Origin: Octopus sinensis | Lineage: Eukaryota | Direction: 5' to 3' | Assembly (NCBI RefSeq): GCF_006345805.1 | Contig: NW_021832221.1 | Span: 248,001-281,000 of the forward strand | Length of the DNA stretch: 33,000 nucleotides | Shown: positions 9,580-33,000 of the stretch, piece after piece | Layout of the letters: each line of letters opens with the position of its first letter | Position numbering within the stretch: the first letter of the stretch is position 1 | Position numbers and translations under genes: made by a program | Notes under the pieces: model-generated | The model's input: only the letters and a program-made list of their open reading frames with translations | What the model was told of the DNA's origin: nothing | Databases searched by the model: none

Positions 9580-9976
9580 TATACACTCTGTCACTCATAA
9601 AATTTTAGACAGAAAATAATAAACGACACCAAAATTAACAAAAAGACCTCAAAAACAGAAAAATTGACCAAGTTGACTTAAACTTTTATTCTAAAAGTTT
9701 TTCTGAAATAAAAATGTATTTCTCGTATTTTTATAATGAAATAATAACTTTCGAGTAGATTTAATTGACTTCTGGCTGCCCTATTGTTTACTAATAAATC
9801 ATTATTCTAGTATTGTTGATGAACATTGATAAAAATAAAGTAAGTCAAGTTAATAAGCGTCGCCATAAGCATGGGACATAATTTTCAGTTGATTTTTATT
9901 ATAGTTAAATTCATATTTGATTATAATAAAATTTATAATTTAGTAAAAAATAAATCTAGATTAAGTATTAAGAAAA

Positions 9977-11920: not shown

Positions 11921-11934
11921 TTGGTGTCCGTATG
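11921..11934 (+). promoter_or_regulatory. Candidate core-promoter or 5' leader motif TGGTGT just upstream of ATG (also 13383-13389, 4386-4392, 6028-6034)
   Basis: ttggtgtccgtATG (SHQ1), ttggtgttccaattcttgtttgtATG (MYPT), gtggtgtATG (RPAP2). Only a few independent genes. Confidence 0.35.
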
Positions 11935-13276
11935 ATTATCCCACGTTTCTGGCTTAAACAAGACGACAAATTTATTTATATAAATGTAAAAATAATGCGC
12001 TGTTACATAAAAAATACGGAAATCGTTATCCCCGATGAGAACACATTCATATTCAGTTCCGACCCATACTTTCTCAGACTTAATTTCCGCAACCAAATAA
12101 AAAGAAAAGACGAGGACGAATGTGATTGCTCTTATGATGCCGACCAAGGTCACTTGCTTAAGTTTATAAAACAGGAGTATTGACCTTCTCAGTATTAAAG
12201 AAACAAAAATCTGAATTTTTTGACGACTTGGAAATGCTGACATTCCTCATGACCCCGCCGGATATCCCCCTACCCAAAAGACCGGGGATCGAAGAAATCG
12301 ACGGCCAGGAATCCGACCACGAGGAAATATGTGTAGGAATCCGCCACCCAAATTCCTACGGATTCGCATTTCGGCGAAACGTTCAGAGTGATGGAGACTT
12401 TTTCCTAAAAGTACAAAGTTTGGAGTATTTAGGACGACTTTGGTGACATTTTTGACAAATCTTGTATTTTTATCAGCCAGGAGGAGCGGGAGAGAATAGA
12501 AAATTCACATTTCAACGATTCGCATTATTTGTATGTTGAATAACTGGTTATCCCTCAGGGCAGATCTGCTGGACCAGGATAACGAAATTGCCGACCTTCT
12601 AAAATATGCCCAGCCCGAATGTGACGAGGACAGCCTGTTAGAATTGAAGGATCTGCCGAAAAGAAGCTGTAATTGTTATCCCCATAACAGACCTCCTGGA
12701 CGGCGAGGAGGAGAACTGGGCGTGTTGTGGATTAGTGGATGTACTTCTCGCCTATTGCTACGAGGATGTGGTGACTGGGGGCCATTTTAGTGTTGAGGTT
12801 GTCCTTTTATTCTCAGGTGGAGTCTCCGTGGACTATTGTCAGACTGGCAGCCACATTGGGGTGTCTGGTGAGACATGAGACAGTGGGGGACGTCCTTCGG
12901 TCATTCACTCGCCGTTGTTTGTGTTATCCGCTTTATCGAAGTCTCAAGTTGATATCATTTGTACGGACTCGTGTGGCCGAGTTGCTCAAATGTATGTTTG
13001 GGGATTTATTTTAGGCAAGAAGAGTCTGGTTAGTAGTCTTATCCGACTGCGGTCTATTCTGAGGAGTGATAATTACAACGTGCTGAATGATTTGTATGTG
13101 GATGATTACTGTGTGTGGACTCAGTCCTTGAAGAGTGGGCGACTGGCTGATTTGGCGAAGGAGTTGTCGGAGGTTTATTATGGGGATGGACTGGGTAGGT
13201 TGTGTTGGAGACGGAGGATATTGGCCTCCACATTCCAGAATTACAAATCGCCGCATCTCTCATTCTCCAAGAGTAG
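11932..13276 (+). CDS. SHQ1: SHQ1, H/ACA RNP assembly chaperone
   Basis: N-terminal CS domain MIIPRFWLKQDDKFIYINVK...PYFLRLNF...SYDADQG|VLTF...FFDDLEMLTFLM, then FNDSHYL|ADLLDQD, RRCLCYPLYRS, LNDLYVDDYCVWTQ and LADLAKELSE|VVLETEDIGLHIPELQIAASLILQE*. All are colinear with remembered SHQ1. Confidence 0.9.
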
Positions 13277-13405
13277 ACTGCCTTGTTATTGCTTGTTTAT
13301 AAATTGTTTTATTGTTTATGCTACATTGAAAGAATAAATAAAATTACGATTAAGTTATTTAAAATATTCAGATAATAAATTCTTGGTGTTCCAATTCTTG
13401 TTTGT

Positions 13406-15220
13406 ATGCCACATCAATCTAAAAACCGAAAAGTGGCCTTCTCGAAAGAAATCATGTTCTACTCAGCCTGCCAATCCAAGGATTTCGAAGACATTGAGAA
13501 CTACCTGAATGCAGGGGCTGACATAAACTATCGCAGTACTTCATCCCTCACTGCTCTCCATCAGGTGCCCTCCCCCACTCCACTCCAGGCCTGTATTGAT
13601 GAGAATTTGAGTCTCGTCCGCCTGTTGATCCACAGAGGAGCCGATCCTTCCGTGAAGGACGAGGAAGGGTGGACTCCCCTCCATGTGGCTGCCTCCATCA
13701 ACAATTTCGAGATAATTCAGTTACTCCTTCACTTAGTCGGAGATTTAGGCTTACTTAAGATTCCTCGTCGAGCACGGGGGGTCTTGTGTCTCTGATATCA
13801 ACTACGATGGGGAATTCCCTCTCGACATGACCACTGATTCCCAAATCGAGGACTTTCTCAGGGCTAAAATGACCTCCCAAGGTATCCCTCTCAGTCCCAT
13901 CTGTTCAGGTGTGGATAGAGAACAGATTCTGGCCAAAGAGCACTCTCAAATGCTGAGGGACGCCCACAAATTGGGTGAATTGGGGGGGAATATGCCGTGT
14001 GACCCCCAGACGGGTGCCACTGCTTTGCACGTGGCCTGTGCGAAGGGATACATCGACGTGATCGAGTTGTGGGTGGGGGTGATTGTAGGGCGTTGTTGAG
14101 TGGGGGGGCGGACTTGGACGTGGAGGACAACGACGGGTGGACTCCCCTCCATGCGGCAGTCCACAATAACCGTGTGGCCGCGGTCACTTTGCTTATAAAT
14201 GCGGGAGCCGACACTACGATTCGATCGAAAATGGTATTTGGGTGTGAATATTGAAGGGGGAGAGCCAGAGGGATTTGGGGGAGGGCGATTTGGTCAAAAT
14301 AATCGACGATCTGATAGTGAAAAACGTATTTAAGTTGTTATGACGAGTAGTACCAACTGCGGAAGGACAGAGAATTGCAGAAAAAGCAGTACAATACGAA
14401 AAGAGAGTTTTAGACATTTTTTGTCGCGATATTCAGAAAAGCAGAAGACGGAGATAAAGGCAATGGACAACACGAACGAATTGAATCACATCCAGTCGTG
14501 CATTGCCGAGTTCGACCCCTCCTCGGACAAGTCTTACTTTTCCCTGGCTTCAGTCGAGCCAATAAGTTCCATCAGGGTGGACTCGTTGTGTCATTTCAGT
14601 CAAAGGGACTTCGCCATCGACTCAGAATGCTCGACCAATTCCACCGAATTGTAGAGACGGACGATTCCCTCTTCTCCCCTCGACTCAAGTCCCCCGAGTC
14701 CCCTAAGAAAGAGTCAGTCGACGTGGAGACTAAAACGTGGTGACATGTTGTATATTTCTAGGTCGAAGGGGAAGAGAATGACTGTGCAGGTTCAGTCGAG
14801 TCGGCCATTTCTAGGAAGTGTTGGACAAGTGCATGGACTTGCCTCCCACCGACAAAATACAGGACGAGGATGCCTGTTTTCAGCGTAGTGTCTCGACTAA
14901 TGTTAAGTCACGAATTCCGTTCCCTACAGAATGCGGTTTTTGGTGAAGGATGCGGAGAAGGAGACCGATTGTGGGAGATGCAGTCGACTGAGGATGGAGT
15001 TGGATCAACTACGGGCGGACAATGACTTGATCAAGACACAACTCAAGTCACGCACGTCGGAGGGGAGTAGAAAGGCTGATGTGAGGATTGGTTTGTGTGG
15101 ACTGAGTAGGAACAATTGACTGAAATGGTCGATTATTTGGACAGAATTTGTCGTTTGGAGGACGAGAATCAACGATTGACAGCAGAGAATGACAGATTGC
15201 GTTCAATGCTTTTTCAGTAG
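13406..15220 (+). CDS. PPP1R12A: PP1 regulatory subunit of the PPP1R12/MYPT (myosin phosphatase targeting) family: ankyrin repeats and C-terminal coiled coil
   Basis: KVAF (RVxF PP1-docking motif), then GADINY...LTALHQ|ACIDENL...DEEGWTPLHVAAS, TGATALHVACAKGY and DNDGWTPLHAAVH. C-terminal coiled coil LEDENQRLTAENDRLRSML, TAG at 15218-15220. Central exons are approximate and paralogue identity is uncertain. Confidence 0.85.
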
Positions 15221-15759
15221 TTTATTTAATTAGCCCTTTTGAATAGTGGATGCTTTATTTTTATGCTGTTTCTGGTTATTTTCACATTTCTAATTCATGC
15301 TGAGTTAAATAGACAAAATGTAATGATTTAATGGAATCCATAAATTATCACTTCTTATTGTTCTTCTGTTTGATCTTAAAGTGGTTAGCTGCTTCATGAA
15401 TAGACCATATTGTTTACAAAATCGATTAGAATCGAATAAAGGTTAAGTATTAACCATTTTCACTTTAATCTACAATCGGAATCTTGCATTAATTCGACAA
15501 CACGCAGTTCACAATTGTTTTTCCACTAAATATTTATACCAGGCATCCACAAATTAGACTGGTTCTTGGAGGGACAAAATAATAATTTAACTTTTCGCAG
15601 TACACTAAGATTGGTCAGACTCTCAAACAACGTTTCACTAAACAACGTTTCCGAGAACCTTTTCTTCTTAACTCTTAGTTTCGATTAAGATTAAGTAAAT
15701 CATGGTTCATAAATCGAACTTACCTTTCAAAATTAGCTATCAACAAAAACAGTCAATGA

Positions 15760-17600
15760 CGAGTTTTTTTGAGTTGGACCGGAGCGTTTGTTATCGTGCG
15801 ACCAACGTTTGGTTAATCTGTGGACACTTTGTTGGACCTTTTCGATTCACCTCCTGTCGGACCACGATAACCGCAGGCGTAGGAAATGAACGGTTCAAAG
15901 TATTGACGGTAAATATTCGTCAGTACCGGGTGGGAACCGTTTTTCCATAAACAGGATAGACTTTTGAGTACGTTCATTTTTTTTCACATTTACGAAGAAG
16001 GTTGTCTACGTGCGGGGAGAAGGAGAGGAGCATGTCGAAGGTTACCTCTAAAACCGTCTGACTTCTGTAGAAGGGTACGGACACATTGTTCAACTTCAAG
16101 TTGACCGAAGCCCTTCCCAATCTTTTATCAGATGTGAAAAGGAACGTGGCGGACGCGTTTACCACGAATCGGTTGTCAGTTAGTCATAGGTTGAGCCAAT
16201 CCAAGTTACCTTGGAGCCTTTCAGAGGCCTTCTGGGTATCCCGGTCCCTCGAGGCTAATACAATGTTGTCCGCATATGAAAGGACAATATCATTATTGAG
16301 GTCTTCCAGGAAAAGGTTGAAAAGGGCCGGGGATAAGAGGGATCCCTAGGGTACTCCGTTGGGCAGGAGACAAGACGTGGACTTCAGGCCTCCGAGGCAA
16401 ACCCTTCCCCTTCGTCCACTTAGGAAACTGGTGATTCATAGTTTGAGTTTTGGCGGAAATTTAGTTTGAAATATCTTCCTTGATAGGAGCTTCCTCAAGA
16501 CAGAGTCGAAGGCTTTGTGGATGTCTAAGAAGCAAAGCACGGCTTTTGGTGCCTCGGTTTGCTTGAAAAGTCGGTACAATTGAATTCCGTCAATGACTGT
16601 AAGTATGAAGACGTGGACTTTGCCTTTTTGAACCCAGGTTGGAAAGGCCTTTCTGGTAAGAATTCTTGTATTCTTCAAAGAACCATCCTTTCTAGAATTT
16701 TTGACATGGAGCATAACAGGGAAACCGGCCTGAAAGATGCCGGGTCGTCTCTTGGTCTTTCAGGTTTCAGTATCGGCCTTATTAGAGCCTGTTTCCATCA
16801 GACGGAATCACATTATGGTTGACCCAGTAGTTGAAGATATCCGTTTGAAACGTGACTCCTTCCACACCAAGATTTTTTAATAGAATGACCTGATTTTGTT
16901 TGGGCCGTAAAAATATAACGTTTTTGTGGAGTGCAAAGTATCCACAACCTCTTTTACTGAGTGGTGGAAAGATTCCGCTTGTTTCTTTAGGCTTCTGATT
17001 GAGAGAGGCGAATCTGATTTCCTGTTCTCCTTGTGTGCTGTTTTCGCGGAGAATTTGATGAGGATGTTCACGTCTTTTTGATCATATTCTTTAACAATTT
17101 CGGTAGCGTCTCCCTTGGCCACGTCCACAATTCTCCCGTTGAACGATTACGGTTTACGGCTGTAAGAATGCAATTCCATTTCAAACAAGTGTTTCTGTGT
17201 TCACTAGTCTTCAATTTCTTGTTCAATGATCTGATAAAGATCATTATATCAGAAGACATTTGGTTTGATTTCTTGAGGCAATTTCTTTCCTTGGTCAGGC
17301 CGGATCTTCTTCGGCTACAAGCAGCGTGAGGTTGACATTTCGGTATAACCATTGCTCTTGCTTCCAGAATAATTTTCGAGAAAAGCCAATGGCCTTATCA
17401 AGAGAGCTGAAGTTGTGTAGATTGCAATTCTTTAGTTTCGAGTTCAAAATCTCCTAGGACCGTGGCCAATTCGCCGAATTGTAATTGTATGAAACAGGAA
17501 CTTTCGTGTTGACAACTTCCCGTTTGATCTCTACCGCGATCGGATTGTGGTCGCTTCTCGTCTCATAGAGGACTGACCACTCCGTTGTCGATAGGTTAAA
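15760..17600 (-). mobile_element. Degenerate, 5'-truncated non-LTR retrotransposon (LINE; AP endonuclease and reverse transcriptase ORF2)
   Basis: Minus-strand fragments in order: SDHNPI...YNYNSANW (end of APE domain), AVLCFLDIHKAFDSV, GVP*GSSLSPALFNLFLEDL, SYADNIV, LEVTFDMLLSFSPHV, NIYRQYFEPFISYAC. Multiple stops and frameshifts; ends approximate. Confidence 0.85.
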
Positions 17601-18391
17601 ATTCATAAACGGTAAAAAAATATGAACGATGATTCACTCAAAAAGAAAAGATTAACTAAACTATACTTTTTTACGATAGAGTTGTCGGTTCCGTGAAATC
17701 AAAACGAAAGTTTTACATTTGGCGTTCATGAAGTGAATCACGGAAGAACCGTATGAGCCAAATTCAATATGCAGTTTTCTCAAAAATCTGAAATTAAACC
17801 AAATTCCTCCTAAAAGTAATCAGCCTCCTAATGTACAGATGTTATTGAAAGATTGAGAAAATCCTCTGCTTCATGTATATTTTCCTGAAACGCATGAAAG
17901 AAAATTTTAATTTCAGGCATTCGTTAATAAGAAATCTTCAAAAAACTGAAAATTGACAGATTTGTGTAAAACTTGTATGCATTTTGCCTACTCAAATCCA
18001 ATTCGAGAGATTAATCCTCATTTTAGGATTCTTCAAAGTGCGTCTACTAATATCTCTACACCACTTTCTCAAACCCATCAATTTAGTTAAGGTTGAAGAA
18101 TCTGGAAAGATATCCTAAAAAGTCATTGTTGTGATTTTAGGACAAAAATCACAGCCCCTGTTTACAGCCCAAATTATTTGATTCAGTTTCTTAAATTTAT
18201 TTCTTTAACGAGTCTCTAATAGTTGTACAGACAAAAAGGTCTGTTGCTGCTAGTTTTTAGGTTGCCCTACCCTGGTAGTGTTTATTACACCATCCTTTAA
18301 TGCACACAGCATAATTTCCCTCACTTACATCATAAAACAAGTTTGAGTAAATGCACAATCAAAAACCAATTAGTGAGTGTTAGTGGATTAA

Positions 18392-18922
18392 TCAAGCCAA
18401 CGCTTTATTGAGCTCATCATAGCACATTTGAGATATTGTGGCTTCGGCCCGTTCAACGTCGTCTTTGGCATTGTTCAGATCAGTGAGGGATTGTGCCAGC
18501 CCATCCCTCACAGCCTGACAATAAACATTCACTATCAATACTTGTTTGTCAATTCTTTCGAGAGGACACAACTCCTCGGCCAAAATGCGCACAGCTCCCG
18601 TTCCTGTCACTGTCAAGGTCCCACTGCTCACTAGCAAAGTCAGGAGGCTCATTGGGGTACCAAAATATTTGACCGTCTCCCCGTTATCCTTGTGCACTGA
18701 GAGGACACCCGGGCGAAGAACACCTAAAATTGGCACGTGTTCTGCCAGGATTCCCAGATCTCCGTCTACAGTAGAGACGTCTACTTGTTTGATGGATTCT
18801 GATTTGAAATAAATCTTAATTATAGATTAAATTGAAACTTCATTCGGGGAACTAAGAGTGAAGGCCATTTGTGAGGCTCTCCGAACAGACCGAAGGAAAA
18901 TACCAATTGCGGGCGCAAACAT
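18392..18922 (-). CDS. ATP5F1D: Mitochondrial ATP synthase F1 delta subunit
   Basis: MFAPAIGIFLRSVRRASQMAFTLSSPNE|IYFKSESIKQVDVSTVDGDLGILAEHVPILGVLRPGVLSV...KYF|VSSGTLTV...ILAEE. Introns of 24, 30 (18631-18660) and 27 nt (18515-18541); TGA at 18392-18394. Confidence 0.93.
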
Positions 18923-19673
18923 ACTCACAAGAAATTAACGATAGGTCCTGTTTTATTTTAAATTTATTTTCAATATAAATACTTTATATTTAACAAATTG
19001 AAGAAAGCCTTTTACTCTATATTCTATGTCTGTGTATGAAAAATACTGACTTAAATGTTGAAGAACGTCCAGGGTGACTAGTACTCGGAAATCATTTTCT
19101 TGATTTAAGGAATGCTGTGTTTACTGCTTGAATTTGCTCGAATAAAGCCTGCTGTAAATGAAAAGTGCAGAGAACTATGAATTCCAAGGAAATTCTAGTT
19201 TTCCGTGTTTACTCTAAGAGAAAATAGTTTTTCACAGTCGACATAAATATATCAATTGATTTGTTTAACTTTAACAAATAATCATAACAATATTATTCTT
19301 TGCAAAATATTGACCGAATCAAAATCCAAAACAAAGCGGAGGATAGGATCTTAAAATACCCTTTATTATTAAAGGACCACTTTTCACATCAATTTCAATG
19401 GAGATCTCAGGATTATTCAGAAACATTCGGTTTTTTTCAAGAGATTACTAGACTGCCAAATTATTCAAGAGAAGTAAGATCACTGAAAGATAAAAAGACT
19501 CTTCGAGGGGATTGCGGCGTCTTTCCCGGATCAACTCAATTTTTGACTTTTTCGGCTTAAAATTATTTAATTATTAAACAAAAAGACAAAAATAGTTGGA
19601 CAATTTTGCTTTAAAGAGCAAAAGAATTTAATGTTAATTTGACATTTGTGTTAATATAATTAATTTCGTGATA

Positions 19674-21160
19674 TTATTCAATAAAATCAGGAATTTCCAC
19701 ATTTCTTAATTTTGCTGCCTTCCTTGATGCTAAACATTTTTCCCTTAAAATAAATATTGATTGATTGTTGTTCTTTATTTCGTTTAGGAGCTGTTCCTTT
19801 AACAAAATTAATGAATGCAAAATGTTCTTTCCTGATTTTAGTTCTGATTCCATATTTTCCTGTTGTTTTGATATTGAACAAGAATTATTTTGCAGCCTTT
19901 AAATATATGTTACTTTAATACTTGTTTTCTAATCTATCGTAAAAATTTTCAGTTTTTAGCCGACTTAAATGAAATGACATTTTTGCGTCGATAAGTCTCT
20001 GAGGTCTGACTAGTTCCGTTTTTGACCGAGAAAGGGAGATATAAGATGTTTCGAGTGCACCGATTTGCACAAGAACCTATTTATGATGAGGTTTTAATGA
20101 AATACATCATCTAGTTGACTTTTAGTGTTTTTGCGTGAGTTTACCATTTTCTGAATCAGCAGTGAGATTGCATCATTTGTGGAATTCCAGTGAGATATAA
20201 GTTTCTTGAATGAAAAATATATTTGTTTATTTGTGTTCTTTGCCATTAATTTTACAGCAAAGATTTCAGTAAAAGAATTGTCAATGATTGATTGTATTTC
20301 TTTGACCCATCTATTTTTTGAAAGTTGAGAATTTTTGGTGAATTTGTTGAGCGAATCACTAATGTGGGCTATTTTGTTACAAAAGTCGTCTATATTGTAG
20401 GCAGAAGTCTTGCTATATATTTCGTTTTTTAATATATTTGACATTTTATGAACTTGCCTGAACTTTAATTTATAAATATAACCCTATTTTTGTATTTATT
20501 TTAGCAGAGACATTTTGGAATTCCTTTTGAATCGTTTCTACGAGTTCCGATTCCTAAAATAAAAAATAATTTTTATTTAATTTTTTTGACAGTAATTATA
20601 TTGCCTATTGTTATAATACACTCCATAATAACCTTCAAAATTGTATTTACAACTTCCTCATGGTTAAAATTTTTTGATTTTATGTTTTGAATCCAAGATA
20701 GGCAGTTACTGGTTACTTGAGCTGGAATATTTATTTGTTGGAGGCTAAAGCTTAGTTGGATATCTGTATCCAGTAATAAATCTCTGGCATGGTTAAGCAA
20801 TTTTAAATTATTTTGAAGTTCCAAGTTCCAGTGAGATATTTCTTCAAGTCTGGAATCAAATTCAGATTTTAATTCGGAATATATGTTATTACACATGTTC
20901 ACAGACTGATCATTCAACTGGAGAGAAGTTAATTTGAATCCTTCTGCATTTCGAATTGTCTTCTCAAATGGACTAGTTTCTTGCTTATATGGGGAATTCT
21001 ATAATTATTTAATCATTTTACAAACTGAAAGGTTAATTTGCGGCAAAAAATCTACTAAAGATTTTTTCTCATTGTTTCTGTTCCATAATGTTTTTTGTCT
21101 CATTTGATCAAAATTAAAGGTAGTATACGAGCGGACAAGAGGATTGGAGAGATTGCTCAT
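19674..21160 (-). CDS. Divergent tektin (ciliary microtubule inner protein)
   Basis: Spliced frame gives FDSRLEEISHWNLEL...IPAQVTSNCL...HEEVVNTILK|ESELVETIQ...SKTSAYNIDDFC...NNQSIFILREKCLASRK, colinear with the tektin pattern (RL.DI.FWK.EL; LLKE.E.I; K..AY.ID..C; NSLFID..KC...R). Subfamily not assignable; start codon inferred. Confidence 0.8.
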
Positions 21161-22084
21161 TATGTAAATTTTTTTTGTTTTGTTGTTGAAATAAGCTTTT
21201 AAATTATTTTTTAAATTGTTCGATAAGTTGCTTTATGACAGCTAAAAATATTTTATTGTAAGTAATCTCACAATCAATTTATATCCAAATTGATTTATAT
21301 GACCTTAATAAACTTGAATTTTACAAAATCAAAAAAATGATGAAAATATTTCTGCTCATTAGTACAAAAATTTTAGTCTATAATTGCATTCTCTGAATTG
21401 TCTTTTGAATTGGCAATTTTGTGGGCGTCATATAAATTAAAACATATTTTTAGTTCGAAAAGTCAAACTATTTGAAAGGATAAAAATCAAGAATTTATTT
21501 TACGTCATGATACGTCTTTATCGAGATACATTTATACACGTAAATTTTATCATTTCAGAGAAAACTATAGCGATTGAATTTAAATTTTTTTAATGGTCTA
21601 TAATTAAAATGAATTTCAAATCAACTTTTCAGGAATTTTTTAGGTGTTTTTTAAATACGTGTTCACTTTTTCATTATTATTTTGTTAGAAATTTTAAATG
21701 CTAGACAGATATTTTAATCATTGTTAAAATTAGTTCATTTTCAACGATTTTTTTAGAATAATAAAGTTATTGTGTTATCTAAGCCTAAAGAATTATTGTG
21801 GAATTATTTAAATAGTTGCACAAAAATTGTACTTCAATATCAAATTTTTGGTCAATAATTTAAGATTTATTGTTGTTTTCATTATTACAAAAAACCACAT
21901 TTAATAAAATTTTCATTTCACAGTGGTTTTAAATACCTCTGTGAATAGATTTTCACTGACAAATATGGATTTATTTTGATTTTATGATTACGTTTGTAAT
22001 ACTGTTAATAATTGCAGATGGATTGAACTAATCTATATATTCTAATTATAATGTACTTATCTTCTTTTAACAGATAAATCAATA

Positions 22085-25000
22085 ATGACCGCACTGGGTA
22101 GGCCGATTTTTCTACTATATAACCGCTTAATGTTTTGTTTTTAGCTGATTTTTTAATTATGATAAGTCCTGATTTTGATTTAGATTCAGGTATATATTTA
22201 ATATAAATCCATAATATACTGATTGTACTTTTCCCTTAATGTTTATACAAATCAATTTCAATAGGAATTCAATCTTCAGGTTCTGTTCCTACACCAGATA
22301 ATTGTTCTTTTTCTAGTTTGAAAAAAAACGATAATAACTCGGATTTAGTACCTGATCTTTCCATAAACGATTCAATACTCCGGGTTAGAATCATTATTAA
22401 TATTCTCAAAGGAATTAATTTTGGTCGCAGAAGGATCTTTGGCAAGTCAAATAGTATTTTTGCAAAACGATGTAATTTTTGTAATAAGATTTTATTGTAT
22501 AGGAAGAGGAAAAATTATGTACATATTACGATACAATGTGCACTTCAAAACAAGTCGATTGTTTGCAGAATATATTAGAAACTCAAAATCAGCTTATTTT
22601 GACACACAAATGTAGCAAAGCTTTTTAATAAATCAGATTCTTTGACTATTTGGAGTGGATACAAGATTATTCAGGCGATTTATTCAGATACCACAACTTC
22701 GCTTAATTATTGGCCAATCGAAAAATTTATTAAATTTCACAAAGCTGAATGGGATGAAATTTACAAAATAGCATCTTCTGGCTGGCTTCCCAGCGAAGTT
22801 AAGGATCGGGAATATTTTCATGGAACGTTTCTAATGTAGATTTTATGTCTATTATTTATAGAATTTTTTTTAAAAATCATAAACTTATTCGGTCCTGCGA
22901 ATGGTTATCAAAAATTAAATTAGAAGGTCCGGGTCTTTTAGTCTTTATGCTTTCTCTGGAGAAACTCTGTTTCTTTGATACAGTTAATAGATATCCATGT
23001 TTCCAGTTCGCTGTCAGTGTTATTTCTTCTTCGCTTTATGATGTAAGAAAGTTTCGAAATTTGATCAAAATTGAAATTCAATCCAGATCTTCAGCTAAAG
23101 AAGAAACTGTACAAGTTTCTCGTATTGCAATTGAGACCGAATTACAAAATCAATCTACAATAAAACATTTTGTCGTGCTCTTTGTTGTCGGTGTCACTGA
23201 AGAGTCCAACAAGTATTGTTTTTGCCAGAAAAAACCTATCGCTGCTGCCTGTTCTTCAATTGATCGTTCATTCTGTCCTAAACTTCAAACTATTTACAAT
23301 TTTTTACCTCTTAATGAAGAGTGTCAAGGTCCTACAAATTTTCCGATTCTTTTACATGCTAATTTTTGTGTCAGTCAACATGAAAGGAACAATTCAAAAT
23401 TCAATTTTGATTGTAAATCCATTTGGAATTCAATTCTAATCCATGAGTGGTTGCCTAGAGCATATTTGGGCTTGATTAAAGAATTTATTGAAAACAAACC
23501 AATCAATCCGTGCATCATATACGGCATGCTTCCTGATGTGAGTTTGGTACCTAATCGGTGGAAAATAATAGCCAATGTTGTTCTTAATGAGTTTCTTGTC
23601 GGTTCTACGGCACTATACGTGGATGCTCAGAAATATTGGACTGATGCCTTGGAACCGTTTATTTTTAATTACAACATTTTTCCATTCTTTAAAGATGTGG
23701 CCGTGCAATTATCAGTTCATTGTGGTGTACCAATTTCAGTGGTTCCTGACCACATTTTTAAAGCAGTGGAAAAAATATTCGGAGAAAGACTTAAAATTTT
23801 GACTCCTGCTAAAGTACGTAAATTACTAATTGGAAACGTTTTTTACGATTCTTTTTCTTGGGAGGAAAAAATGATGCTCATTCAGTTTATCACTGCTGAT
23901 AAAATTTTTACGTAAATAATTTATTTCAAATATTTTAGAGATCTTATCGGCATAAAGCTTTTACCAGTTTTTGACGAAGTGTTTGTAACTTTTCGCGATA
24001 ACCAAGACAAAAATAAAATTTTTATGAATTTCAGAGAATTTGATTCAGAAATCGTTGAGCATTTTCAAGAATCTTTCATTTCCAGAAACTTGCCTTCCGA
24101 AATTGAAGATATTCTACTTCGCCTAACGAAATCAGGTTGGCTATTTCATTCGGAACATATGTAAACAAGATTTTGTTAGGTTGCACTCAACTTTGTTTCA
24201 TAACCCAATTTGATGTTTTCAAATTGTTGACAAGAAAACTCGATGAGAGATTCTTTATGAACAACAACTTCAGCGTTTCTCGTAAAGAAAGTCAAAATGT
24301 TTTGGAATGTGTAAGTTTGTTGTGGAAGCATCTAAAAAACTGGTCTAATTTAGATCTTCTTAAAATCTCCGACTTTCCTCTGATCCCCTTTTTTAAAAAT
24401 GATGGAAGGCTTTATCTTGAATCTTATGGTAGTCACACAATTGCTAAAAAACACGGTAAAAATCAGTTAGAAGATATTTTGTGCAATTTTTTGAATTATA
24501 TGGATGGCGTCTTGATTCAAGATCATATGATAGTATCTACGCTTATAAAAAATAATTCGGAAATAAATTGTTACATTCAACCTCCCACTCACGAAGGATT
24601 TGTAAACTTTTTAAATGCTTGGGTTATAAAACACGGTTTCGAGAATATTAAAAGACAATTTTTTCAAATTCCAAAAGACTTTTTTCTTAAATTACTGAGT
24701 TTTATCGAGAAATTAAACTTGCCTCCAGATATTTCATTTCTGTTTAACATTGGTCATTTCAAACCTGTTTCTAATTATTCCGGATCAATGTCCCAAGACA
24801 ATAATTTTATTTTTAATGAAAAATTGTGCTTTAAACAAAGAGAAAATATTCCGACATTTGAACTACACCATTATGAATCTTCTAATAGTCCAAAAAACGG
24901 ATTGCTTATGTCTCAAAAGTTACGGTTGGATAGCATAATAGTTGCAACAACTTCTGGACGTCTTGTAAGTTGCACAGACTGTGTTGACTCTTCTGATGAT

Positions 25001-28000
25001 TTTATGAAAACTTTATTTGAGGGAATGGATGTGTTTATGGATTTAAATTTCTACAGTCTAAATTTTGTTAATTACCTGGTTGCTATGGGTTTTAAAAAAC
25101 GTAATACTATTACTCCAGATGACCTCAAAAATATCATCAGTCATATTTGTTACAATGAAAAAAACTCTCATGATAACCGAATTGTATGTTTACTTGACTT
25201 CTTTGAGTCAAATACCGATATTTTACAGAATCCTAAAAATAAAGAACTTAAAGATTACGTAATCTCACAAAAATGGTTTCCAATTAAAACACAGCGCCCT
25301 CCTAATTATCCCAAAACTATTCCGTGGCTTGGAGAATTTGAAAAATTCAATTTTTTTAATTGTAGAGAAATTAGATTACAAAAATATTCTTACCTCGTCG
25401 GAAGTGTTAGTCGAGTACACAAATTTAATATTTCTGCTAAATTAGCATACATTTTTGGCATTGACTGTTCTCCTCGAATAAACGACATTGCAGCCCATTA
25501 TTACAATGTAATGAGATTTCAAACTTCTTCGGATTTTGATCAATTTAATTTGTATATGAAGGCCTTTTATGAATCTCTTAAGAATATTTGTGATGAAAAT
25601 CCCCTAAAAATCAATTCATTTATTGATATGATACCGCATAACTGGCTTTGGAATGGCTATCATTTTGTGAACAATGGAAGTTTTTTGTTTCTCACAAATT
25701 TCTTAAAACCGTTTGTTACACTTCTTGCATACTTTAAAATTCCGTACAGCTCAGATGTCTACAGCTTTCTCTCAGAAATCAAAGACAAACACCTGAAAAT
25801 TTGTGAGCGTGAAGTAAAAAACGACCTTTCTCTTATTTTCTCATCACTTCAAGATATTCTTTCGACAGAAACATTATTGATTGAAAAATTAGATCTTCCA
25901 GTTTACTCATCCTCTCAGAAATTAAAATTTTCAAAGGGCAATACATGTGTGATATGTCCTTTTCTCAAATCCGAAAATATAGCAAGGAATCACCAGGTCA
26001 GCATACATGGAAAATCGTATAATATTTTACATCAAGACTTTCCTCTAACATTGGCAGAAAAATTAAAAATACAAATTTATAGTCCAAGTGAAACGAATAT
26101 TAAAATATTGAAAAAAGAAGATACAAGCTCATCTCACTCCTTTCTCGCTACCTTCAAAGAAATAATGCTTTTTGGCGATTCTATTCGTTCCTCAGAAATA
26201 AAATTTATGTATGATATGCGAATTCTGAGCAACAATTTTATGAAAAACGCCAGTATTTGCAACACAAAATCGAATTCTCTATGGATATACTTTAATTCGT
26301 CATTATCATCTTCGTTTTTTGACATTCCAAATGTTAAAGTATTTGATTTTCTGCAATTTTTCTCTCGGAGTATCACGATTTTGACTCGAAACATGTTTAT
26401 TGTCTACGACTTTGATTCTGAAAAAAATCCAATAAAAATAAATACGACGAACAGTTTAAATCCATCTGTAAATTACAGAGAATTGTTTAGCTGTTTTGAA
26501 GGAATTTTTGGCTGCCAAATATCTTCTAAGAGTTTCTATTCTGGAATTCTTATTCATTGTCCCCTTCAGAACTTTTGTTTCTATAAAAATACCCAAAACT
26601 CAGTTGATTTATTCATGAATATTTTTTTTGAAGCTTTCTCTAGGTCGACAGTAATGTACATGCTATATTTGGATGGAATATTCCGCTTGTCAATTCATTT
26701 AAATACGTTTGCTAATCCGGAAAATTCTGAACAGTTGTTCTGTCTTCAAAAATACTGCAGCAATATTTTGCAAAAACCTACTTTCAGAACAACTAGAGAT
26801 GACAATGTTGTAGTGGATGAATACATTTGCTTAAATAACTTTGGAAGTTCATTCAAATATCATACTATAGGAATTCATGAAATGCTGTCTTCGTATTCAT
26901 CTATGAATAAAAAACAACTTATATTTACTACATCAGTTTACAACTTCAAATTAAATGTCACAAAGATTGGAATAAAATATATCAATCTGTATGAAGTTAA
27001 AAATCTCGAAGAATGGGCCACATGTATCATAATTCAGCCTATCAATGATCAATCATCAATTTCTGTAATCTGCCTTGCAGTTCCTTATCGGATTTTAACT
27101 AAAAATACAAACAGACACCTCAAATATGGACAGACAATGTTTTCTTCATTGAATACCGAAAAAAACAATTTGCCCGTCAGTATTTACGCGGCAGTATATA
27201 ACAAGAATAACGATTCAGAAATAAAGCCATACGTCATTAACAAATTATATTCGAATAAAAATTTCCACGAATATCTATCAAATGCATATCTTATATTTCT
27301 TGAAAATATAAGCAAAATGAATTTCAAATTAATTCCACCTTCAGTTTATTATTCACTGTGGCCAATAAATGTTGAAATCGATAGCAAATATTACTTAATG
27401 GCCAGTTCCATGTATCTAAAGATTTTCTCCAGTTTATCAATTAAATATTCACTATTTCCTGTTGATAATGTACTCTCCACAGTTGAACAAATTGCCATTT
27501 TTGATCAATCTATTACCGATTGCTTAATTTCTGAATTTCTCATAAGTGTTTGTAAATCAATCTGTTGCAAAAAGCTCGTTCTTGATATGCCACAATATCT
27601 TATTTCGTTTATAAACAGTTTTTTACCCAAGGATTTAGAAAATGATTGTATTTATGACATTATTAAATTATACACCCATGTTATATTGCCTCGTTATAAT
27701 GAAATTAATTGGGATCTACGAGAAAAATTAATATTTTATGCATTGACAACTTTATTCGAAGATGTTGGGGTCAACTTGGAATATTTTCTATTTATACCTA
27801 TTGCTCCGTGTGGAACTAAACTTGGCTCACCACGTTGTCTTTTGGAACCGTCGCATGATTTTAAAGTTCTTTTCGAAGACATCTCCGATGAGATATTTCC
27901 CATTGATTCTTTCATATCTCGAGTAGATGTTTTGAACTCTCTCAGGCAACTTGGTTTGAATCGAGATAACATGTCATGGAAACAAATTGCAGGAAGATTA

Positions 28001-31000
28001 AATTTTATACATTCGACCAAATCAGACGAGCTAAAAATAACTAGAATTGCAACTTTGTTTAAATATATTCACAAAAATATTACAAATAAAATTTTATGTG
28101 AACCTGAATTACAAAAAGAAATAATATCTTCTAAAATTCTTCCTGTCAAGAAAAACATTTTTTTCTCGTCTGAAATGAGGGAATTTGCGAGTTCTCATGA
28201 AATTTATTTGCAAGTCTATGAAGCGTGTGTATCAATATTAAATCCAATTTTGGATACTGATGCCATTCCATTAATTGAAGATCCTGGAATACTAAAATTT
28301 TTCAACATTGAATCAAAAATACCAACAACAGAACTTGTGATCGATAATCTCATGGCTTTGGAAAGATTTAGTGCCAAAAAAGAAGTCAGAGAGTCTTTAA
28401 TCCAGAAATATACAAAAGAAATGTATATTGTTTTGAGCAAATCACTTTCTGATAAAATAGACGTTGATCTAATTGTAAGCCGACTCGAAAGAACAAAATG
28501 GGTTTATTTTTCAGGAGAATTTTTATCTACTAAAAAATTATGTTTTGGAAATGTTGTGACATGTCCTTCATATATTTATGATATTTCTTGCAGTTATTTG
28601 GACAGTCATAAACCACTTTTGCTTCTCCTTGGCGCGAAAGAACATTTTTATGCAAAAGATTATGGAAAAATTTTGAGAAAAATTGAAGCTGGCAATGACA
28701 AAATCGGTCCAGCTTTGATCAAAAAATACGATATCATTCTCAGTGGCTTAATCGAAGCACTGAGAAAATCTAACAAATCATTTTTAGACTATCAGTTAAT
28801 CAACGGGCCAGTGCTTTTACCCGACAAAGATGGAAATTTCGCTATTAGTTCGTGCCTTGTATCTGATTACTGTTTATCTTCCACAAGTGATTTTTATAAA
28901 GAAATATACTCCCATGACAATTTTCTTCATCCTCTAATTTCACGTAAAAATGCTGAATTTTTGGGAGTTAAAAAATGGCAAGAGATATTATTCGATTGTG
29001 ATGTCGCTACTTGTGATTATCGTATTGAATTATTCGACCGTACTTTACCAAAAAATGATGTTCTATTTGTAATGATATGCAGTGAAATGATAAATTTTTT
29101 TGATCAAATGGCCTGCACCAAAGTAAAAATACTGATTGATTCTCGACAAAACGAACTCGAAAAAAATATTAACTTACAATTTAATTCCCTATTTGAAGAA
29201 AGTTTGTGCTTTCAAGTCGACAAATTTATTAATGACGATGAAATAAACACACAGATGAGTAGAATGTTTTCCTCCTATTATCCCATAAGCTCAAAAAGTA
29301 CAATGGGATTTAATGCCGGATCTCTGATTTCTCGGATTGTAGGAATTTTTGGTCAAAATTTTGGCATTGAATCATTTGAAATGATGGAATATGACATTAA
29401 AAATAATGTCTTTTTACAAAAAACGACCCATAAATACAAAAATATAGCTCTCTTGAAAAAATTATATGAAAATATTTTGAAGATATTTAATTTTGATACA
29501 ACATTTTCTCATTCTTCAACAATATTTCGTTTCCCATTGAATTTCATGAACGTATTGGGAAAATGTTTCAATGTCGAAAAAAATTATATTTTGGAACTTT
29601 TATCAAAAACCATATCAACGCAAATAATTTTTCTGAATAATATTCGTCAAGTATCTATTCAGGAAATTGACGTTAATTCAACATTTCAAAAAAATATATT
29701 AATAATTGCCAATACTAAACCATTTGAAAACAATATATATTCGCACTACAAAGAAAATCTTTTAAAATTACAAAATGATTATTTTTCTTCTAAAATACCT
29801 ATTTCTGTTATAGAGCAAGCATATTGTTTGTATAAAGTCGAAGTCTCAGTCGAGACAAGTTTCAAAACCACATCTACATGGAACTGTTGTGATATGGTTG
29901 GATTTAGTCTTCAAGATTTGCCATCAAACTTTATTTGTGATTCCATCATACGTTCATTTCCCAGAGTAATTGTCGCAGTTGGTGGAAATACAGATTCACT
30001 TGTAGAATTTGATAATATTTTTTGTGACAGGACATTAACTATCTCCCAATCAAATATAAGGGGAACTTATATAAATGGAAATTTTTTATTAGATTTGACA
30101 AATTTTTCACTGGATTGTAGTATCCAACAAAGAAGTGAGTGGAACGAATGTTTAGCCGTAAATATGTGCGCCAAAGCCCACCTTCGGGCGCTCGATTATC
30201 TCCGAAACAGTTCTAATTCAAACTGTAATGAATTTTTGAAATATCTCCCTACGCCGTCATTCAAGATAGTATCAGAAAGCATTTCACAAAAATATTTGAG
30301 TTGCTTTTACTCGTACCTCTATCAAAATTCTTTTCACTTTTTCCCAAGTAGAAACAAAAATGGTAACATTTTGTGGGATACAGGAAATAACATATTTTTA
30401 ATTAACCAAAGCGAGTCGGCGGATTATTTACAAGTATTAAAAACATGTGGAATGAAGTTAATTGAGGTTTCCAGTGAATTTTCGGATACTCTAGCTAAGT
30501 ATTTACCTCAAATAAAACAGTTTTCCATCCCGGAGGTACTTTCATTTTTTAAGTCCTTATCGATTGATGATAATTTACTTTCTGAATGTGTTATCAAATC
30601 TGTGCCGAATTTGTGCATAATTTTCAAATATCTTATAAATTCAGACTCTGCCCGTATCGATATAGACGGAATACCTCTAATCCTTACTGCGGATTACAAA
30701 ATTTGTTCAGGTTCTGTCAAAGATTCCAAATATTTATTCAAATATCACCGAATATTTGGAAATTTTCGCCATTTGTTTGTTCACCGAAACATGTTGAAAA
30801 TATATCAAAACGAAAAATTTTTATCCAGTGGTATTTTTGTCGAATTGTGCACACAAGATTTGGTTGATTTATTAATAAAGAATGCTAATTTAAAAAGTCA
30901 GCTGACGGTCGAAACCCTCAAAGACCTATCCATGGTTTATCCATCTCAGCTATTTTGGAAAGAGCTCAAGACCCTTTGGAATACAATCGACTTGATATTT

Positions 31001-33000
31001 ATAAAATTTTGTCGAAAAAATCGAATAAATTCTCACGATGCTATTGTGCGGCAATTTTTTTTGGAATTTGAGTTAATCGAGCAATGGTGTTTACTCCCGG
31101 TAGTTTTCTGGGACTCTCGTGATCAAAAAGTACGGAGACAACTGTTTAGTCTACGGAGTCACAAAAGAATTATGAATATTCCAAAATATATTGATCCTGA
31201 GTTGCAAAACTTTTTTGTTAGAGCTGGAATACCTCAGCCTGACAAATCGAAAATAAAGTTATGGTTTTACAGAAAATTAACGCCGGACATTGATAATCCT
31301 CGCCATTTCGAACAACTTTTAAAAATGCTTGGTCGAAGCGAAACTGCACCAGAGGGAATGGAATTAGCCGCTTTTTGGAAATTCATCTTAAAGATTTACG
31401 GCCAAGTAAAAGACAAAGAATTTTTATTGAAATTACTCCTCCAACTTAAAATCTATCAACTTTATAATGGAAAATTGACTTCCCTTGAATACCAAGAAGT
31501 GTTTATTTGTTCAGAAAATGATGTACCTGATACTGAATCCGATTCATGGTGTTACTATGAAGGGAAGGCTCTCCTTGCTGCCAGCATGATGGATTACGCA
31601 AGAATTTTAAAAAGACTAAACTGCAAATTCATTTCAAAAATCGAAATCTATACGAAATTTGTACTTATCCGCTTCAAAACTATGTCTCAATCAGCACAGT
31701 TGAACCATTTTCGTTATATAATAAATTTGATAACAACAAACGCATTAGATTCTGAAATGAAAAATTTCATGGAATTTATTTCCACGATTCCATTAGTACG
31801 AAACAGTAAAGAGGAAATGATTATTGTTAAGGATCTTTATGATCCAGAAAATCAAAATCTAGTCAATATGTCACTTATTTTCCCAAATATTCGATTTCCA
31901 AACAAAGAGTACTGCTCTTTCGAATTTCTGACTTTTTTAAGAAAACTCGGTCTTATGAATAAACTGCCTGTATGTGTTATAATGCAAATTGGAAACATCT
32001 TAAAAACAATTTACTTAAATTCTCCAACTGAACAAACCATTCTTTTAAGCAAAAGTCTTTATGAATGTTGTTTACAGTCATTTACCGGCAATGTAGATTT
32101 CAAAAATATTGGGGAAATATGCTTTTTGCCGAAATATAATGTAATTCAACAATTGACTCAAATACATCTTCCATTAAACACTGAATCTCGGTCTTTAAAT
32201 CTATGCCATTCAGGGCTGGCCGCGGACAGTTCATTAATATGGACTGTTTTGTCTGTACTGCCAGAATGGATTGAAGAAACTGACGAAACACGCCAATTCC
32301 TCAAAGTCACAGGAGTTGTGTACAAATTGACACCAGAACTTGTAGTAGCCAATCTCTGCAATGTTGCAAAAAATATTACTAAGTGTAATCATAATTTTGA
32401 AGACGTTTGTACAGTTTTATTTAAAATATTTTCATTTTTATCAAAATCTCAACTTGGAGACTCATTAATTAAAATTTTGAGAGACCTTCAAATCATTCCA
32501 ACCAATTCTAAACTATTTGTTAAGCCATCAAAAGCAGTATTTAATATCCACACATTTTATGAAATCCCTTATTATTTAGAGACAGTAAATTTACATTTTT
32601 TTGGATTTATTGAATTATTTGAACGCATTGGTGTGTGTTATTTTCCGAATATATCAACATTTGCTAAAATATTGTCTGAACTCGCGACTAAAAATATCAG
32701 TCTTAATGCCAACAATTTAATATATGCTGTTAGAGCGACCAAAGGGCTGTTTTTTGAATTATTGGAAAGATTTGATGACTCGGTCACTGAGATTATTGAA
32801 ACTATTTCCGATGGATTATATCTTCCCACTCGTAGAGGCACATTAGAGATTTCTTCTGATCTTGTATACGTTGACGACATAAGTTTGTTGAAAAGACTGA
32901 AAGGAATTGATTGCTCAATTTTGCTTACCCACAAAGAACTAGAAATGGATTGGGAATCGTTTTTGAATTCCATTCTAAAAATTCCAATAAAATGGCGACC
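22085..33000 (+). CDS. SACS: Sacsin-like giant protein with three degenerate Hsp90-like (SRR) repeats; 3' end beyond the window
   Basis: Small 5' exons (inferred introns 22098-22144, 22190-22264, 22384-22411, 22472-22502, 22612-22636, 23912-23938, 24136-24179). A single frame from 24180 was stop-free wherever translated by hand and yields no terminated ORF in the track. Sacsin-like motifs: IYNFLPL...LHANF...WNSILI, DLIGIKLLPV, RPPNYPKTIPWLG, LHQDFPLTLAEKLKI, SEWNECL, YLPTRRGTLEISSDLVYVDD, KWRP. Start codon tentative. Confidence 0.85.

What the first reader, a model, noticed from the sequence alone, without database searches (positions are those of the whole stretch)
22384..29400. Sacsin with apparently dead nucleotide-binding sites in all three Hsp90-like domains, yet an intact ORF of more than 10 kb
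Canonical SRR domains carry KELxQNAxDA (GHKL motif with the Mg/ATP-binding Asn) and a G-rich lid GxFGxGFNSVY (established, recalled). Here repeat 1 reads ILR|ELILVAEGSLASQIVFL (N to V; depends on inferred intron 22384-22411) and the lid seems deleted. Repeat 2 (~26155) reads FKEIMLFGDSIRSSEIKFMYDMR (N to F) with no G-rich lid. Repeat 3 (~29085) reads SEMINFFDQMACTKVKILIDSRQ (N to F) with only a TMGFNAG remnant. Flanking anchors (E, D, FxxDxR) are kept and the frame is intact, so the fold seems selected but ATP binding does not. The same Phe in two repeats could fill the nucleotide pocket. Inference: a pseudo-ATPase scaffold sacsin retained in a highly reduced animal.
Basis: partly seen in the sequence, partly recalled or inferred. 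Interest (0 to 1): 0.72.

Follow-up and report, generated by a model that had tools for sequence, protein, structure and literature searches.

The report
Sacsin gene with dead ATP sites
The window holds most of a very divergent but intact sacsin gene in which all three Hsp90-like ATPase domains have lost the residues needed to bind and split ATP, a natural hint that this giant chaperone-like protein can be kept for a job that needs no ATP.

Summary
A spliced gene starts near 22159 and runs off the window end. It gives at least 3,525 stop-free codons, and 8,892 nt of that is one uninterrupted frame. It aligns end to end with animal sacsins (E 1e-58, 21% identity). Its three repeats match sacsin repeats 1, 2 and 3 in that order.

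Profile and multiple alignments put Val, Phe and Phe where the Mg/ATP-binding Asn of the GHKL motif belongs. The neighbouring Asp is also lost in all three repeats. So is the glycine-rich lid (only G-F-N survives, in repeat 3) and the first Arg of the middle-domain Arg pair (repeat 1 keeps the second). The catalytic Glu is kept in all three.

Of 458 repeats surveyed in 213 other sacsin-like proteins, 337 are exactly canonical. A few proteins have one degenerate repeat, notably repeat 3 of land-plant sacsin-like proteins. None has all repeats degenerate.

Positions conserved in other animal sacsins are kept 30% of the time in the three ATPase domains and 55% elsewhere (p 2e-7). AlphaFold models of repeats 2 and 3 still match the human sacsin SR1 crystal structure best.

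Most likely this is a pseudo-ATPase sacsin. Expression, ATP binding, the C-terminus, the organism and the exon structure inside repeat 1 are untested.

The parts
22159..22189 (+). Putative first coding exon, starting with ATG (MISPDFDLDS-G)
   Evidence: Hand-derived. It joins in frame to 22265 across a GT..AG intron at 22190-22264 (75 nt). Inferred only. Coral sacsins likewise start about 30 residues before motif I.
22265..22383 (+). Exon ending in ...SINDSILR, the helix leading into motif I of repeat 1
   Evidence: Frame translation. The HMM alignment covers SINDSILRELI.
22384..22411 (+).
   Evidence: GTTAGA...AAAG. Splicing it gives ILRELILVAEGS, which the SRR profile aligns to ilkELiQNAdDAgA.
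22412..22438 (+). Repeat 1 motif I, ELILVAEGS: Asn120 to Val (22424-22426), Asp123 to Gly, Ala124 to Ser, catalytic Glu kept
22345..23792 (+). Repeat 1 (SRR1 equivalent): Hsp90-like N-domain plus middle domain, with tiny introns at 22472-22502, 22612-22636 and 22836-22861 in the preferred model
   Evidence: SRR1-class HMM scores 64.4 bits, against 22 for the other classes. The Arg loop SQHERNN is at 23373-23393. The exon structure between 22472 and 22636 is not resolvable.
23912..23938 (+). 27-nt GT-AG intron containing an in-frame TAA
24136..24179 (+). Last intron before the long exon (44 nt). The alternative is 24161-24234 (74 nt).
   Evidence: Both options restore the frame. They were not discriminated.
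24180..32998 (+). Giant exon, lying within the uninterrupted frame 24107-32998, which is cut by the window end
   Evidence: 0 stops in 2,964 codons, against 134-262 in the other frames.
26126..27583 (+). Repeat 2 (SRR2 equivalent). Motif I EIMLFGDSI is at 26159-26185 with Asn to Phe at 26171-26173. The lid remnant KVFDFLQFF at 26336-26362 has no Gly. The Arg loop YNKNNDSEI is at 27197-27223.
   Evidence: The AF2 model (pLDDT 54.6) hits 5V44/5V47 first.
29051..30493 (+). Repeat 3 (SRR3 equivalent). Motif I EMINFFDQM is at 29084-29110 with Asn to Phe at 29096-29098. The lid remnant SKSTMGFNAG at 29291-29320 keeps only G193, F194 and N. STIFRFPL is kept. The Arg loop LDLTNFSL is at 30089-30112.
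   Evidence: Pfam SACS gives a weak hit here (22.4 bits, below the cut-off of 32.8). The AF2 model (pLDDT 60, pTM 0.67) hits 5V44-47 first.

Best explanation
This is a very fast-evolving orthologue of animal sacsin. All three Hsp90-like (GHKL/Bergerat) nucleotide sites have been lost independently, while the protein as a whole is still kept by selection. Each repeat still looks like a sacsin repeat: an N-domain with the Bergerat fold followed by a middle domain. It lacks the Mg-coordinating Asn, the neighbouring Asp, most or all of the glycine lid that closes over the phosphates, and the first Arg of the middle-domain pair. It therefore most likely cannot bind or hydrolyse ATP in the canonical way.

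Shown here: the homology, the repeat order, the substitutions, the intact reading frame, and the preferential decay of the ATPase domains.

Inferred: the protein works as an ATP-independent scaffold or holdase. For example, it could organise cytoskeleton or clients and hand them to Hsp70 through a J-domain, if one lies beyond the window.
For: - **Colinear match.** It aligns colinearly to a canonical coral sacsin (E 1e-58, 90% coverage). There are 94 further sacsin hits, none above 31% identity.
- **Positional orthology.** R1 scores 64 bits on the SRR1 model, R2 31 bits on SRR2 and R3 68 bits on SRR3. Each is clearly the best score on its own class. The three Asn losses are therefore separate events.
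- **ATP-site residues** (list from PMC9880540 Table 1):
  - Asn120 becomes V, F, F.
  - Asp123 becomes G, S, Q.
  - Ala124 becomes S, I, M.
  - G188, G191 and G193 are absent, except G193 in R3.
  - The first Arg of the Arg474 pair becomes E, D/K, N. R1 keeps the second Arg.
  - The catalytic Glu is kept in all three.
- **Rarity.** 337 of 458 repeats in 213 other proteins are exactly ELNDANFDKGGGFTRR at these positions. No other protein has all repeats degenerate.
- **Selection on the protein.** The long frame has 0 stops in 2,964 codons, with P about 1e-102.
- **Decay concentrated in the ATPase domains.** Conserved columns are kept in 53 of 175 cases there and 164 of 299 elsewhere, Fisher p 2e-7. 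The library hits mostly fail to align repeat 2's N-domain. Pfam finds only R3, below its cut-off, and finds no HATPase_c_3.
- **Fold.** AF2 models of R3 and R2 match the sacsin SR1 crystals 5V44-47 first (E 1e-8 and 3.5e-10), then SMCHD1, MutL/PMS2 and GRP94/Hsp90.
Against: - No expression data, no related species and no biochemistry were available.
- Model confidence is modest (pLDDT 55-60). The models were built on alignments of canonical repeats, which pulls them toward the canonical fold.
- In R3 an Asn sits one residue before the canonical position (EMIN-F), roughly on the same helix face.
- R1 keeps the second Arg of the RR pair, and R2 may have a Lys there.
- Within R3 taken alone, ATP-site residues are kept about as often (5 of 15) as other invariant positions (26 of 72). 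The site-specific signal comes from the domain-level test, not from the residue list.
- ATP binding by sacsin repeats is itself debated (PMC9880540).
- The C-terminus (J-domain, HEPN) lies outside the window.
- A second, canonical sacsin may exist elsewhere in the genome.
Confidence: 0.7

Rival explanations
1. The gene is a degenerate paralogue. The genome also has a canonical, ATP-competent sacsin elsewhere. This copy has been freed from the ATPase role and has either taken on a sub-function or is slowly being lost. The repeats are still dead, but the protein is not the lineage's only sacsin.
For: Corals, amphioxus and sea urchins carry several sacsin-like genes. An Acropora paralogue already has a partly degenerate repeat 3, EITDAHFDRGTGLTRK.
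Against: A compact genome with tiny introns and closely spaced genes suggests gene loss rather than expansion. Nothing in the 33 kb window speaks to other copies.
Confidence: 0.15
2. The repeats still bind or hydrolyse a nucleotide in a non-canonical way. For example, repeat 3 could use the Asn one position upstream together with the kept Glu, the G-F-N lid remnant and Thr.
For: The catalytic Glu is kept in all three repeats. R3 keeps Lys180, Gly193, Phe194 and Thr269 and has Asn at the Gln119 position.
Against: In the survey the Mg-binding Asn is replaced in only a handful of the 458 repeats from plants to animals. Asp123, two lid glycines and the first Arg of the pair are also gone in R3. 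R1 and R2 have no nearby Asn and no glycine lid. From general knowledge of GHKL enzymes (memory), loss of this Asn abolishes nucleotide binding.
Confidence: 0.08
3. The gene is a decaying pseudogene or an assembly or annotation artefact, and the motif losses are just neutral decay.
For: Divergence is extreme: the tree branch is 2.66 changes per site against a median of 0.96. Pfam barely recognises the protein.
Against: A 2,964-codon frame with no stop in 30% GC DNA is impossible without selection; about 225 stops are expected. The tiny introns all have GT-AG ends and restore the frame. Conserved positions outside the ATPase domains are kept 55% of the time.
Confidence: 0.02
4. It is not a sacsin orthologue but another member of the wider Tiamat / NO VEIN / sacsin-like clade that happens to have three repeats.
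For: Land-plant sacsin-like RING proteins also have three repeats, the third one degenerate. The tree could not place the window protein inside animals because of long-branch attraction to the plant outgroup.
Against: The best matches are animal sacsins (chiton, amphioxus, corals; E down to 1e-58 and 1.8e-29). The plant proteins score far lower, at 3e-11 and 3e-6. Repeat spacing matches animal sacsins.
Confidence: 0.05

Closest known systems
Animal sacsin (human SACS and invertebrate 'sacsin-like' proteins of corals, chiton, brachiopod, echinoderms, amphioxus)
   Same: A giant, mostly single-exon gene. It has three sacsin repeating regions in the same order and spacing, each with an Hsp90-like N-domain plus a middle domain. 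The alignment is colinear over 90% of the visible length. Like the coral proteins, it starts directly at repeat 1 without a ubiquitin-like domain.
   Different: Identity is only 21-24%. All three repeats lack the Asn, Asp, lid glycines and first Arg of the pair, which are near-invariant in the others. The Pfam SACS domain scores below its cut-off. [quoted passage not shown]
Third repeat of land-plant sacsin-like RING proteins (Lycium, Capsicum, Marchantia)
   Same: A sacsin repeat whose nucleotide-site residues are replaced (DLLCCELEL-GGLTQR and DLICCELEPCGGLTHR at the 16 key positions). It is kept from liverwort to Solanaceae, so it is a stable pseudo-ATPase repeat.
   Different: In plants, repeats 1 and 2 of the same protein are fully canonical. 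Here no repeat is. The replacing residues also differ: Leu/Ile in plants, Val/Phe/Phe here.
Human sacsin SR1 domain crystal structures (PDB 5V44-5V47)
   Same: They are the best structural match for the AF2 models of repeats 2 and 3 (TM 0.6-0.73 normalised to the crystal chain).
   Different: Sequence identity in the structural alignment is only 13-18%. The lid region of the models has pLDDT below 50.
Degenerate GHKL domains used as scaffolds, such as the TopoVIB-like partners of Spo11 (recalled from memory, not tested here)
   Same: A Bergerat-fold domain kept after loss of the ATP-binding motifs.
   Different: An unrelated branch of the GHKL superfamily, with a single domain and a different partner and process.

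Membership tests
Sacsin (SACS) | Three sacsin repeating regions in series, each matching its own repeat class | tested here: met
   Class HMM scores: R1 64.4 bits on SRR1, R2 31.1 on SRR2, R3 68.0 on SRR3, each the best in its class. The repeats sit at model residues about 48, 1246 and 2221.
Sacsin (SACS) | Colinear full-length similarity to known sacsins | tested here: met
   E 1e-58 at 90% coverage to P0001. The exhaustive search gave 94 hits, all sacsin-like where named.
Sacsin (SACS) | Pfam SACS domain (PF25794) above its gathering score | tested here: not met
   There is one hit, in R3, at 22.4 bits against a cut-off of 32.8. R1 and R2 are not detected.
Sacsin (SACS) | [quoted passage not shown] | not testable with these tools
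   The gene runs off the window at 32998. Attempts to extend the contig failed.
Sacsin (SACS) | N-terminal ubiquitin-like domain (vertebrate form) | tested here: not met
   No room and no open frame between the tektin gene and the putative ATG at 22159. Coral and other invertebrate sacsins also lack it (bioRxiv 10.64898/2026.09.30.754977).
GHKL / Bergerat-fold ATPases | Motif I with Mg-coordinating Asn (ExxxNAxDA) | tested here: not met
   Val, Phe and Phe occupy the Asn column in R1, R2 and R3. Asp123 is also replaced.
GHKL / Bergerat-fold ATPases | Glycine-rich ATP lid (GxxGxGF) | tested here: not met
   R2 has KV------FDFLQFF and R3 has KS---TMGFN. R1 has no glycine lid in any exon model.
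GHKL / Bergerat-fold ATPases | Catalytic Glu of motif I | tested here: met
   Glu is kept in all three repeats.
GHKL / Bergerat-fold ATPases | Middle-domain Arg contacting the gamma-phosphate (human Arg474/1839/2893) | tested here: not met
   nRRnl becomes HERNN (R1, second Arg kept), NDSEI or NKNN (R2) and TNFSL (R3). The role of the residue is taken from PMC9880540.
GHKL / Bergerat-fold ATPases | The alpha/beta sandwich fold itself | tested here: inconclusive
   AF2 models of R2 and R3 hit the sacsin SR1 crystals first. However, pLDDT is 55-60 and the input alignments consisted of canonical repeats.
GHKL / Bergerat-fold ATPases | Nucleotide binding and hydrolysis | not testable with these tools
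   This needs a biochemical assay.

The most novel reading that the evidence does not exclude
This is the only sacsin of a drastically simplified animal (dicyemid-like), and it works with no functional nucleotide site at all. In that case the ancestral, indispensable job of sacsin would be an ATP-independent scaffolding or holdase activity. The ATPase cycle of the repeats would be a dispensable regulatory layer. The pockets, now lined by Phe or Val, may be closed or re-used for another ligand.
Probability: 0.3. Interest if true: 0.65.

Novelty: new variant of a known kind. Interest (0 to 1): 0.45.

Why it matters
Sacsin is mutated in the ataxia ARSACS. Whether its three Hsp90-like repeats really need to bind and hydrolyse ATP is still argued (PMC9880540; PMC3629688 cites the ATPase evidence).

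This gene is a full-length sacsin that selection has kept open for more than 10 kb. It has lost the Asn, the Asp, most or all of the lid and the first Arg of the pair in every repeat. That makes it a natural separation-of-function variant. It suggests which parts of the protein matter without ATP: the inter-repeat regions and middle domains are kept best. It also gives a ready-made negative control for ATP-binding assays.

It extends the list of pseudo-enzymes to a whole multi-domain GHKL protein. The value is limited until expression, the C-terminus and the absence of a canonical paralogue are shown.

Tried and rejected
- **Direct PDB search.** A phmmer search of the long ORF against PDB sequences found no sacsin or Hsp90 chain. 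The protein is too divergent, and only the fold search worked.
- **NCBIfam.** It found nothing.
- **RNA genes.** Rfam and tRNA scans of the window were empty, so no rRNA was available to name the organism.
- **Extending the contig to reach the C-terminus.** An exact look-up of the 356-aa ORF found no record. An exact 57-nt match in metagenome contigs found none.
- **Close relatives for dN/dS.** The exhaustive search of 1.84 billion representatives gave nothing above 31% identity.
- **Phylogenetic placement.** The window branch is 2.66 against a median of 0.96 and joins the plant outgroup, which is long-branch attraction. The placement was discarded.
- **Exon structure inside repeat 1.** Enumerating GT-AG introns gave 434 stop-free solutions with nearly equal HMM scores, so the state of the repeat 1 lid is left open.
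- **Amino-acid drift.** FYMINK is 42% in the N-domains against 37-38% elsewhere. Canonical sacsins show a similar offset (0.29 against 0.25), so this is not evidence for relaxed constraint.
- **Residue-list test within repeat 3.** ATP-site residues are kept 5 of 15 times and other invariants 26 of 72 times. There is no difference, so the domain-level test was used instead.
- **Unused search.** The third word-index protein search was left unused. Naming the organism from a housekeeping gene would not change the verdict.


Full report
**What is in the sequence.**
The right third of the window is AT-rich, at 29-33% GC. It carries one uninterrupted frame on the plus strand from 24107 to the window end, 2,964 codons long. 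A 370-codon frame lies just upstream at 22803-23912.

Reading the DNA shows short GT..AG introns that link the pieces:
- 22472-22502 (31 nt)
- 22612-22636 (25 nt)
- 22836-22861 (26 nt)
- 23912-23938 (27 nt)
- either 24136-24179 (44 nt) or 24161-24234 (74 nt)

The spliced model has 3,525 codons (10,575 nt) and no stop. A plausible ATG exon at 22159-22189 joins through a 75-nt intron.

The long frame has 0 stops. The other five frames have 134-262, and base composition predicts about 225, so P is about 1e-102. The 'ORF of more than 10 kb' is therefore a spliced coding sequence rather than one ORF, but it is certainly kept open by selection.

**It is a sacsin.**
- Pfam gives only one weak SACS-domain hit, at repeat 3 (22.4 bits, cut-off 32.8). 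NCBIfam and a sequence search of PDB give nothing.
- The word-index search finds two proteins. The better one (P0001, 3,682 aa, E 1e-58, 21% identity, 90% coverage) is a coral sacsin fragment. It has canonical LKELIQNADDAGATEV and GRFGLGFNAVYN motifs and a J-domain and HEPN tail.
- An exhaustive HMMER search of 1.84 billion representatives used residues 1241-2440 of the model. It returns 94 hits, best E 1.8e-29, and none above 31% identity. The named ones are sacsin-like proteins of a chiton, amphioxus, sea urchins, a starfish, a brachiopod, corals and land plants.
- HMMs built separately from repeats 1, 2 and 3 of sixteen three-repeat proteins score R1 best on class 1 (64 bits against 22). 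R2 scores best on class 2 (31 against 20 and 6). R3 scores best on class 3 (68 against 28-29).

The three repeats are therefore positional orthologues of SRR1-3, and their defects arose separately.

**The nucleotide sites.**
The residues that contact ATP in human sacsin are listed by Perna et al. (PMC9880540, Table 1). They are:
- Glu116, Leu117, Asn120, Asp123 and Ala124 in motif I
- Asn160 and Phe164
- Lys180, Gly188, Gly191, Gly193 and Phe194 in the lid
- Thr269
- Arg474 of the middle domain

An HMM of 61-64 canonical repeats numbers its columns as the human residue minus 80. That HMM, MAFFT class alignments and two align_proteins runs all give the same register.

| Feature | R1 | R2 | R3 |
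|---|---|---|---|
| Motif I | ELILVAEGS | EIMLFGDSI | EMINFFDQM |
| Catalytic Glu | kept | kept | kept |
| Asn120 | Val | Phe | Phe |
| Asp123 | Gly | Ser | Gln |
| Ala124 | Ser | Ile | Met |
| Lid | no glycine lid in any model | KV------FDFLQFF, no glycine | KS---TMGFN, only Gly193-Phe194-Asn kept |
| Arg pair (nRRnl) | HERNN, second Arg kept | NDSEI or NKNN | TNFSL |
| Thr269 | kept | Ile | kept |

One nuance: R3 has an Asn one residue before the canonical column.

**Repeat 1 is partly unresolved.**
Between 22412 and 22835 there are 53 candidate GT-AG introns and 434 stop-free combinations. Their SRR1-HMM scores span only 58-73 bits. Motif I at 22412-22438 is untouched in all but the lowest-scoring combinations, whose intron starts inside it at 22424.

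**How unusual this is.**
I located 458 repeats in 213 other sacsin-like proteins and read the 16 key columns.
- 337 are exactly ELNDANFDKGGGFTRR. Most of the rest differ conservatively or are N-terminally truncated ORF fragments.
- Chiton, brachiopod, bivalve, crinoid, urchin, starfish, amphioxus and coral proteins are canonical in every repeat.
- Genuine internal degenerate repeats do exist:
  - repeat 3 of land-plant sacsin-like RING proteins (Lycium DLLCCELEL-GGLTQR, Marchantia DLICCELEPCGGLTHR)
  - one metagenomic protein
  - repeat 3 of an Acropora paralogue (Asn to Thr)
  - one repeat of a five-repeat protein (Asn to Ile)
- In each of these the other repeats are canonical. A protein with every repeat degenerate was not seen.

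**Is the loss specific to the ATPase domains?**
In a full-length alignment with nine animal sacsins, the three N-domains are the best conserved parts of the canonical proteins (0.66-0.74 conservation). They are among the worst conserved parts of the window protein, at 0.18-0.25 identity, which gives the lowest ratios along the protein.

Columns conserved in at least 8 of 9 sacsins are kept in 53 of 175 cases in the N-domains and 164 of 299 elsewhere (30% against 55%, Fisher p 2e-7). The middle domains keep 49% and the regions outside the repeats keep 59%. The library hits likewise mostly begin after the N-domain of repeat 2.

A caveat is that misalignment is more likely where divergence is greater. 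Within R3 alone, the ATP-site list is kept no less often than other invariant columns (5 of 15 against 26 of 72).

**Fold.**
- The AF2 model of R3, built with eight canonical SRR3 sequences, has pLDDT 60 and pTM 0.67.
- The AF2 model of R2, built with eight SRR2 sequences, has pLDDT 55 and pTM 0.52.
- In both, the lid region is below pLDDT 50.
- Foldseek ranks the human and lizard sacsin SR1 crystals 5V44-47 first for both models (E 1e-8 and 3.5e-10, TM 0.6-0.73 on the crystal chain). SMCHD1, MutL/PMS2 and GRP94/Hsp90 follow.

This fits a retained Bergerat fold, but the canonical alignments bias the models. The 'Phe fills the pocket' idea was not testable, because no coordinates are returned.

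**Interpretation.**
The best reading is a pseudo-ATPase sacsin. The protein is under selection as a whole, and its three nucleotide sites are gone.

The mechanism beyond that is inference. It could be a scaffold or holdase role that does not need an ATP cycle, perhaps still coupled to Hsp70 if a J-domain lies downstream.

The rivals are these:
- It is a degenerate paralogue beside a canonical copy. This was not testable from one window.
- It binds nucleotide in a non-canonical way. This is unlikely, given how many site residues are lost at once.
- It is a pseudogene. The open frame excludes this.
- It belongs to the plant or Tiamat-like branch rather than to sacsin proper. The hit ranking makes this less likely, but only the missing C-terminus can settle it.

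**Organism.**
The organism was not identified.
- The tree is useless here: the window branch is 2.66 against a median of 0.96 and is attracted to the plant outgroup.
- Introns of 25-31 nt are reported among animals only for myxobolid myxozoans and Dicyema japonicum (PMC13644364).
- The neighbouring tektin gene suggests a ciliated organism. That would fit a dicyemid better than a myxozoan, but this rests on inference and memory.

**Verdict.**
This is a new variant of a known family. It is moderately interesting because it bears on whether sacsin needs ATP.

Noticed in passing
window 22190-24234: The sacsin gene has a run of extremely short GT-AG introns (25, 26, 27, 28 and 31 nt, plus one of 44 or 74 nt and a possible one of 75 nt), mostly with GTA donors. 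A 2026 paper reports such lengths among animals only for myxobolid myxozoans and Dicyema japonicum.
   Followed up: partly
window 20094-21160, minus strand: Tektin-like exons lie head to head with the sacsin gene across a 1-kb spacer of 23% GC. The Pfam Tektin hit is E 3e-8 for 20576-20998, and 20094-20444 is probably the next exon. A tektin implies cilia or flagella.
   Followed up: partly
window 1194-1601 (+), 12879-13334 (+), 13379-13792 (+), 11722-12246 (-), 18395-18826 (-): There are exon-like frames of housekeeping genes: RRP12 HEAT repeats (E 1e-35), SHQ1, an ankyrin-repeat protein, a weak tRNase Z match and the mitochondrial F1 ATP synthase delta subunit. The locus is densely packed with genes.
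   Followed up: partly
window 1-19000 compared with 19000-33000: GC content is uneven. Stretches of 44-50% GC (2000-3000, 7000-8000, 10000-11000, 12000-15000, 16000-17000) alternate with stretches of 30% GC on the left. The sacsin gene is uniformly 29-33% GC.
   Followed up: no
window 6690-7950: Long stop-free frames overlap on both strands (293, 269 and 175 codons) in a 49% GC island. The two longest have no Pfam match (the 175-codon frame was not scanned). They may be a GC-rich repeat or an unrecognised gene.
   Followed up: no
window 17454-17606, minus strand: A short ORF contains ...SDHNPIAVEI.... From memory this resembles the end of an APE-type endonuclease of a non-LTR retrotransposon. 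It may be a transposon fragment.
   Followed up: no
proteins P0164 (Lycium), P0198 (Marchantia) and cluster members: The third sacsin repeat of land-plant sacsin-like RING proteins lacks the Asn, the Asp and one lid glycine. This state is conserved from liverwort to Solanaceae, while repeats 1 and 2 are canonical. It looks like a long-lived pseudo-ATPase repeat. The papers read here do not describe it.
   Followed up: partly
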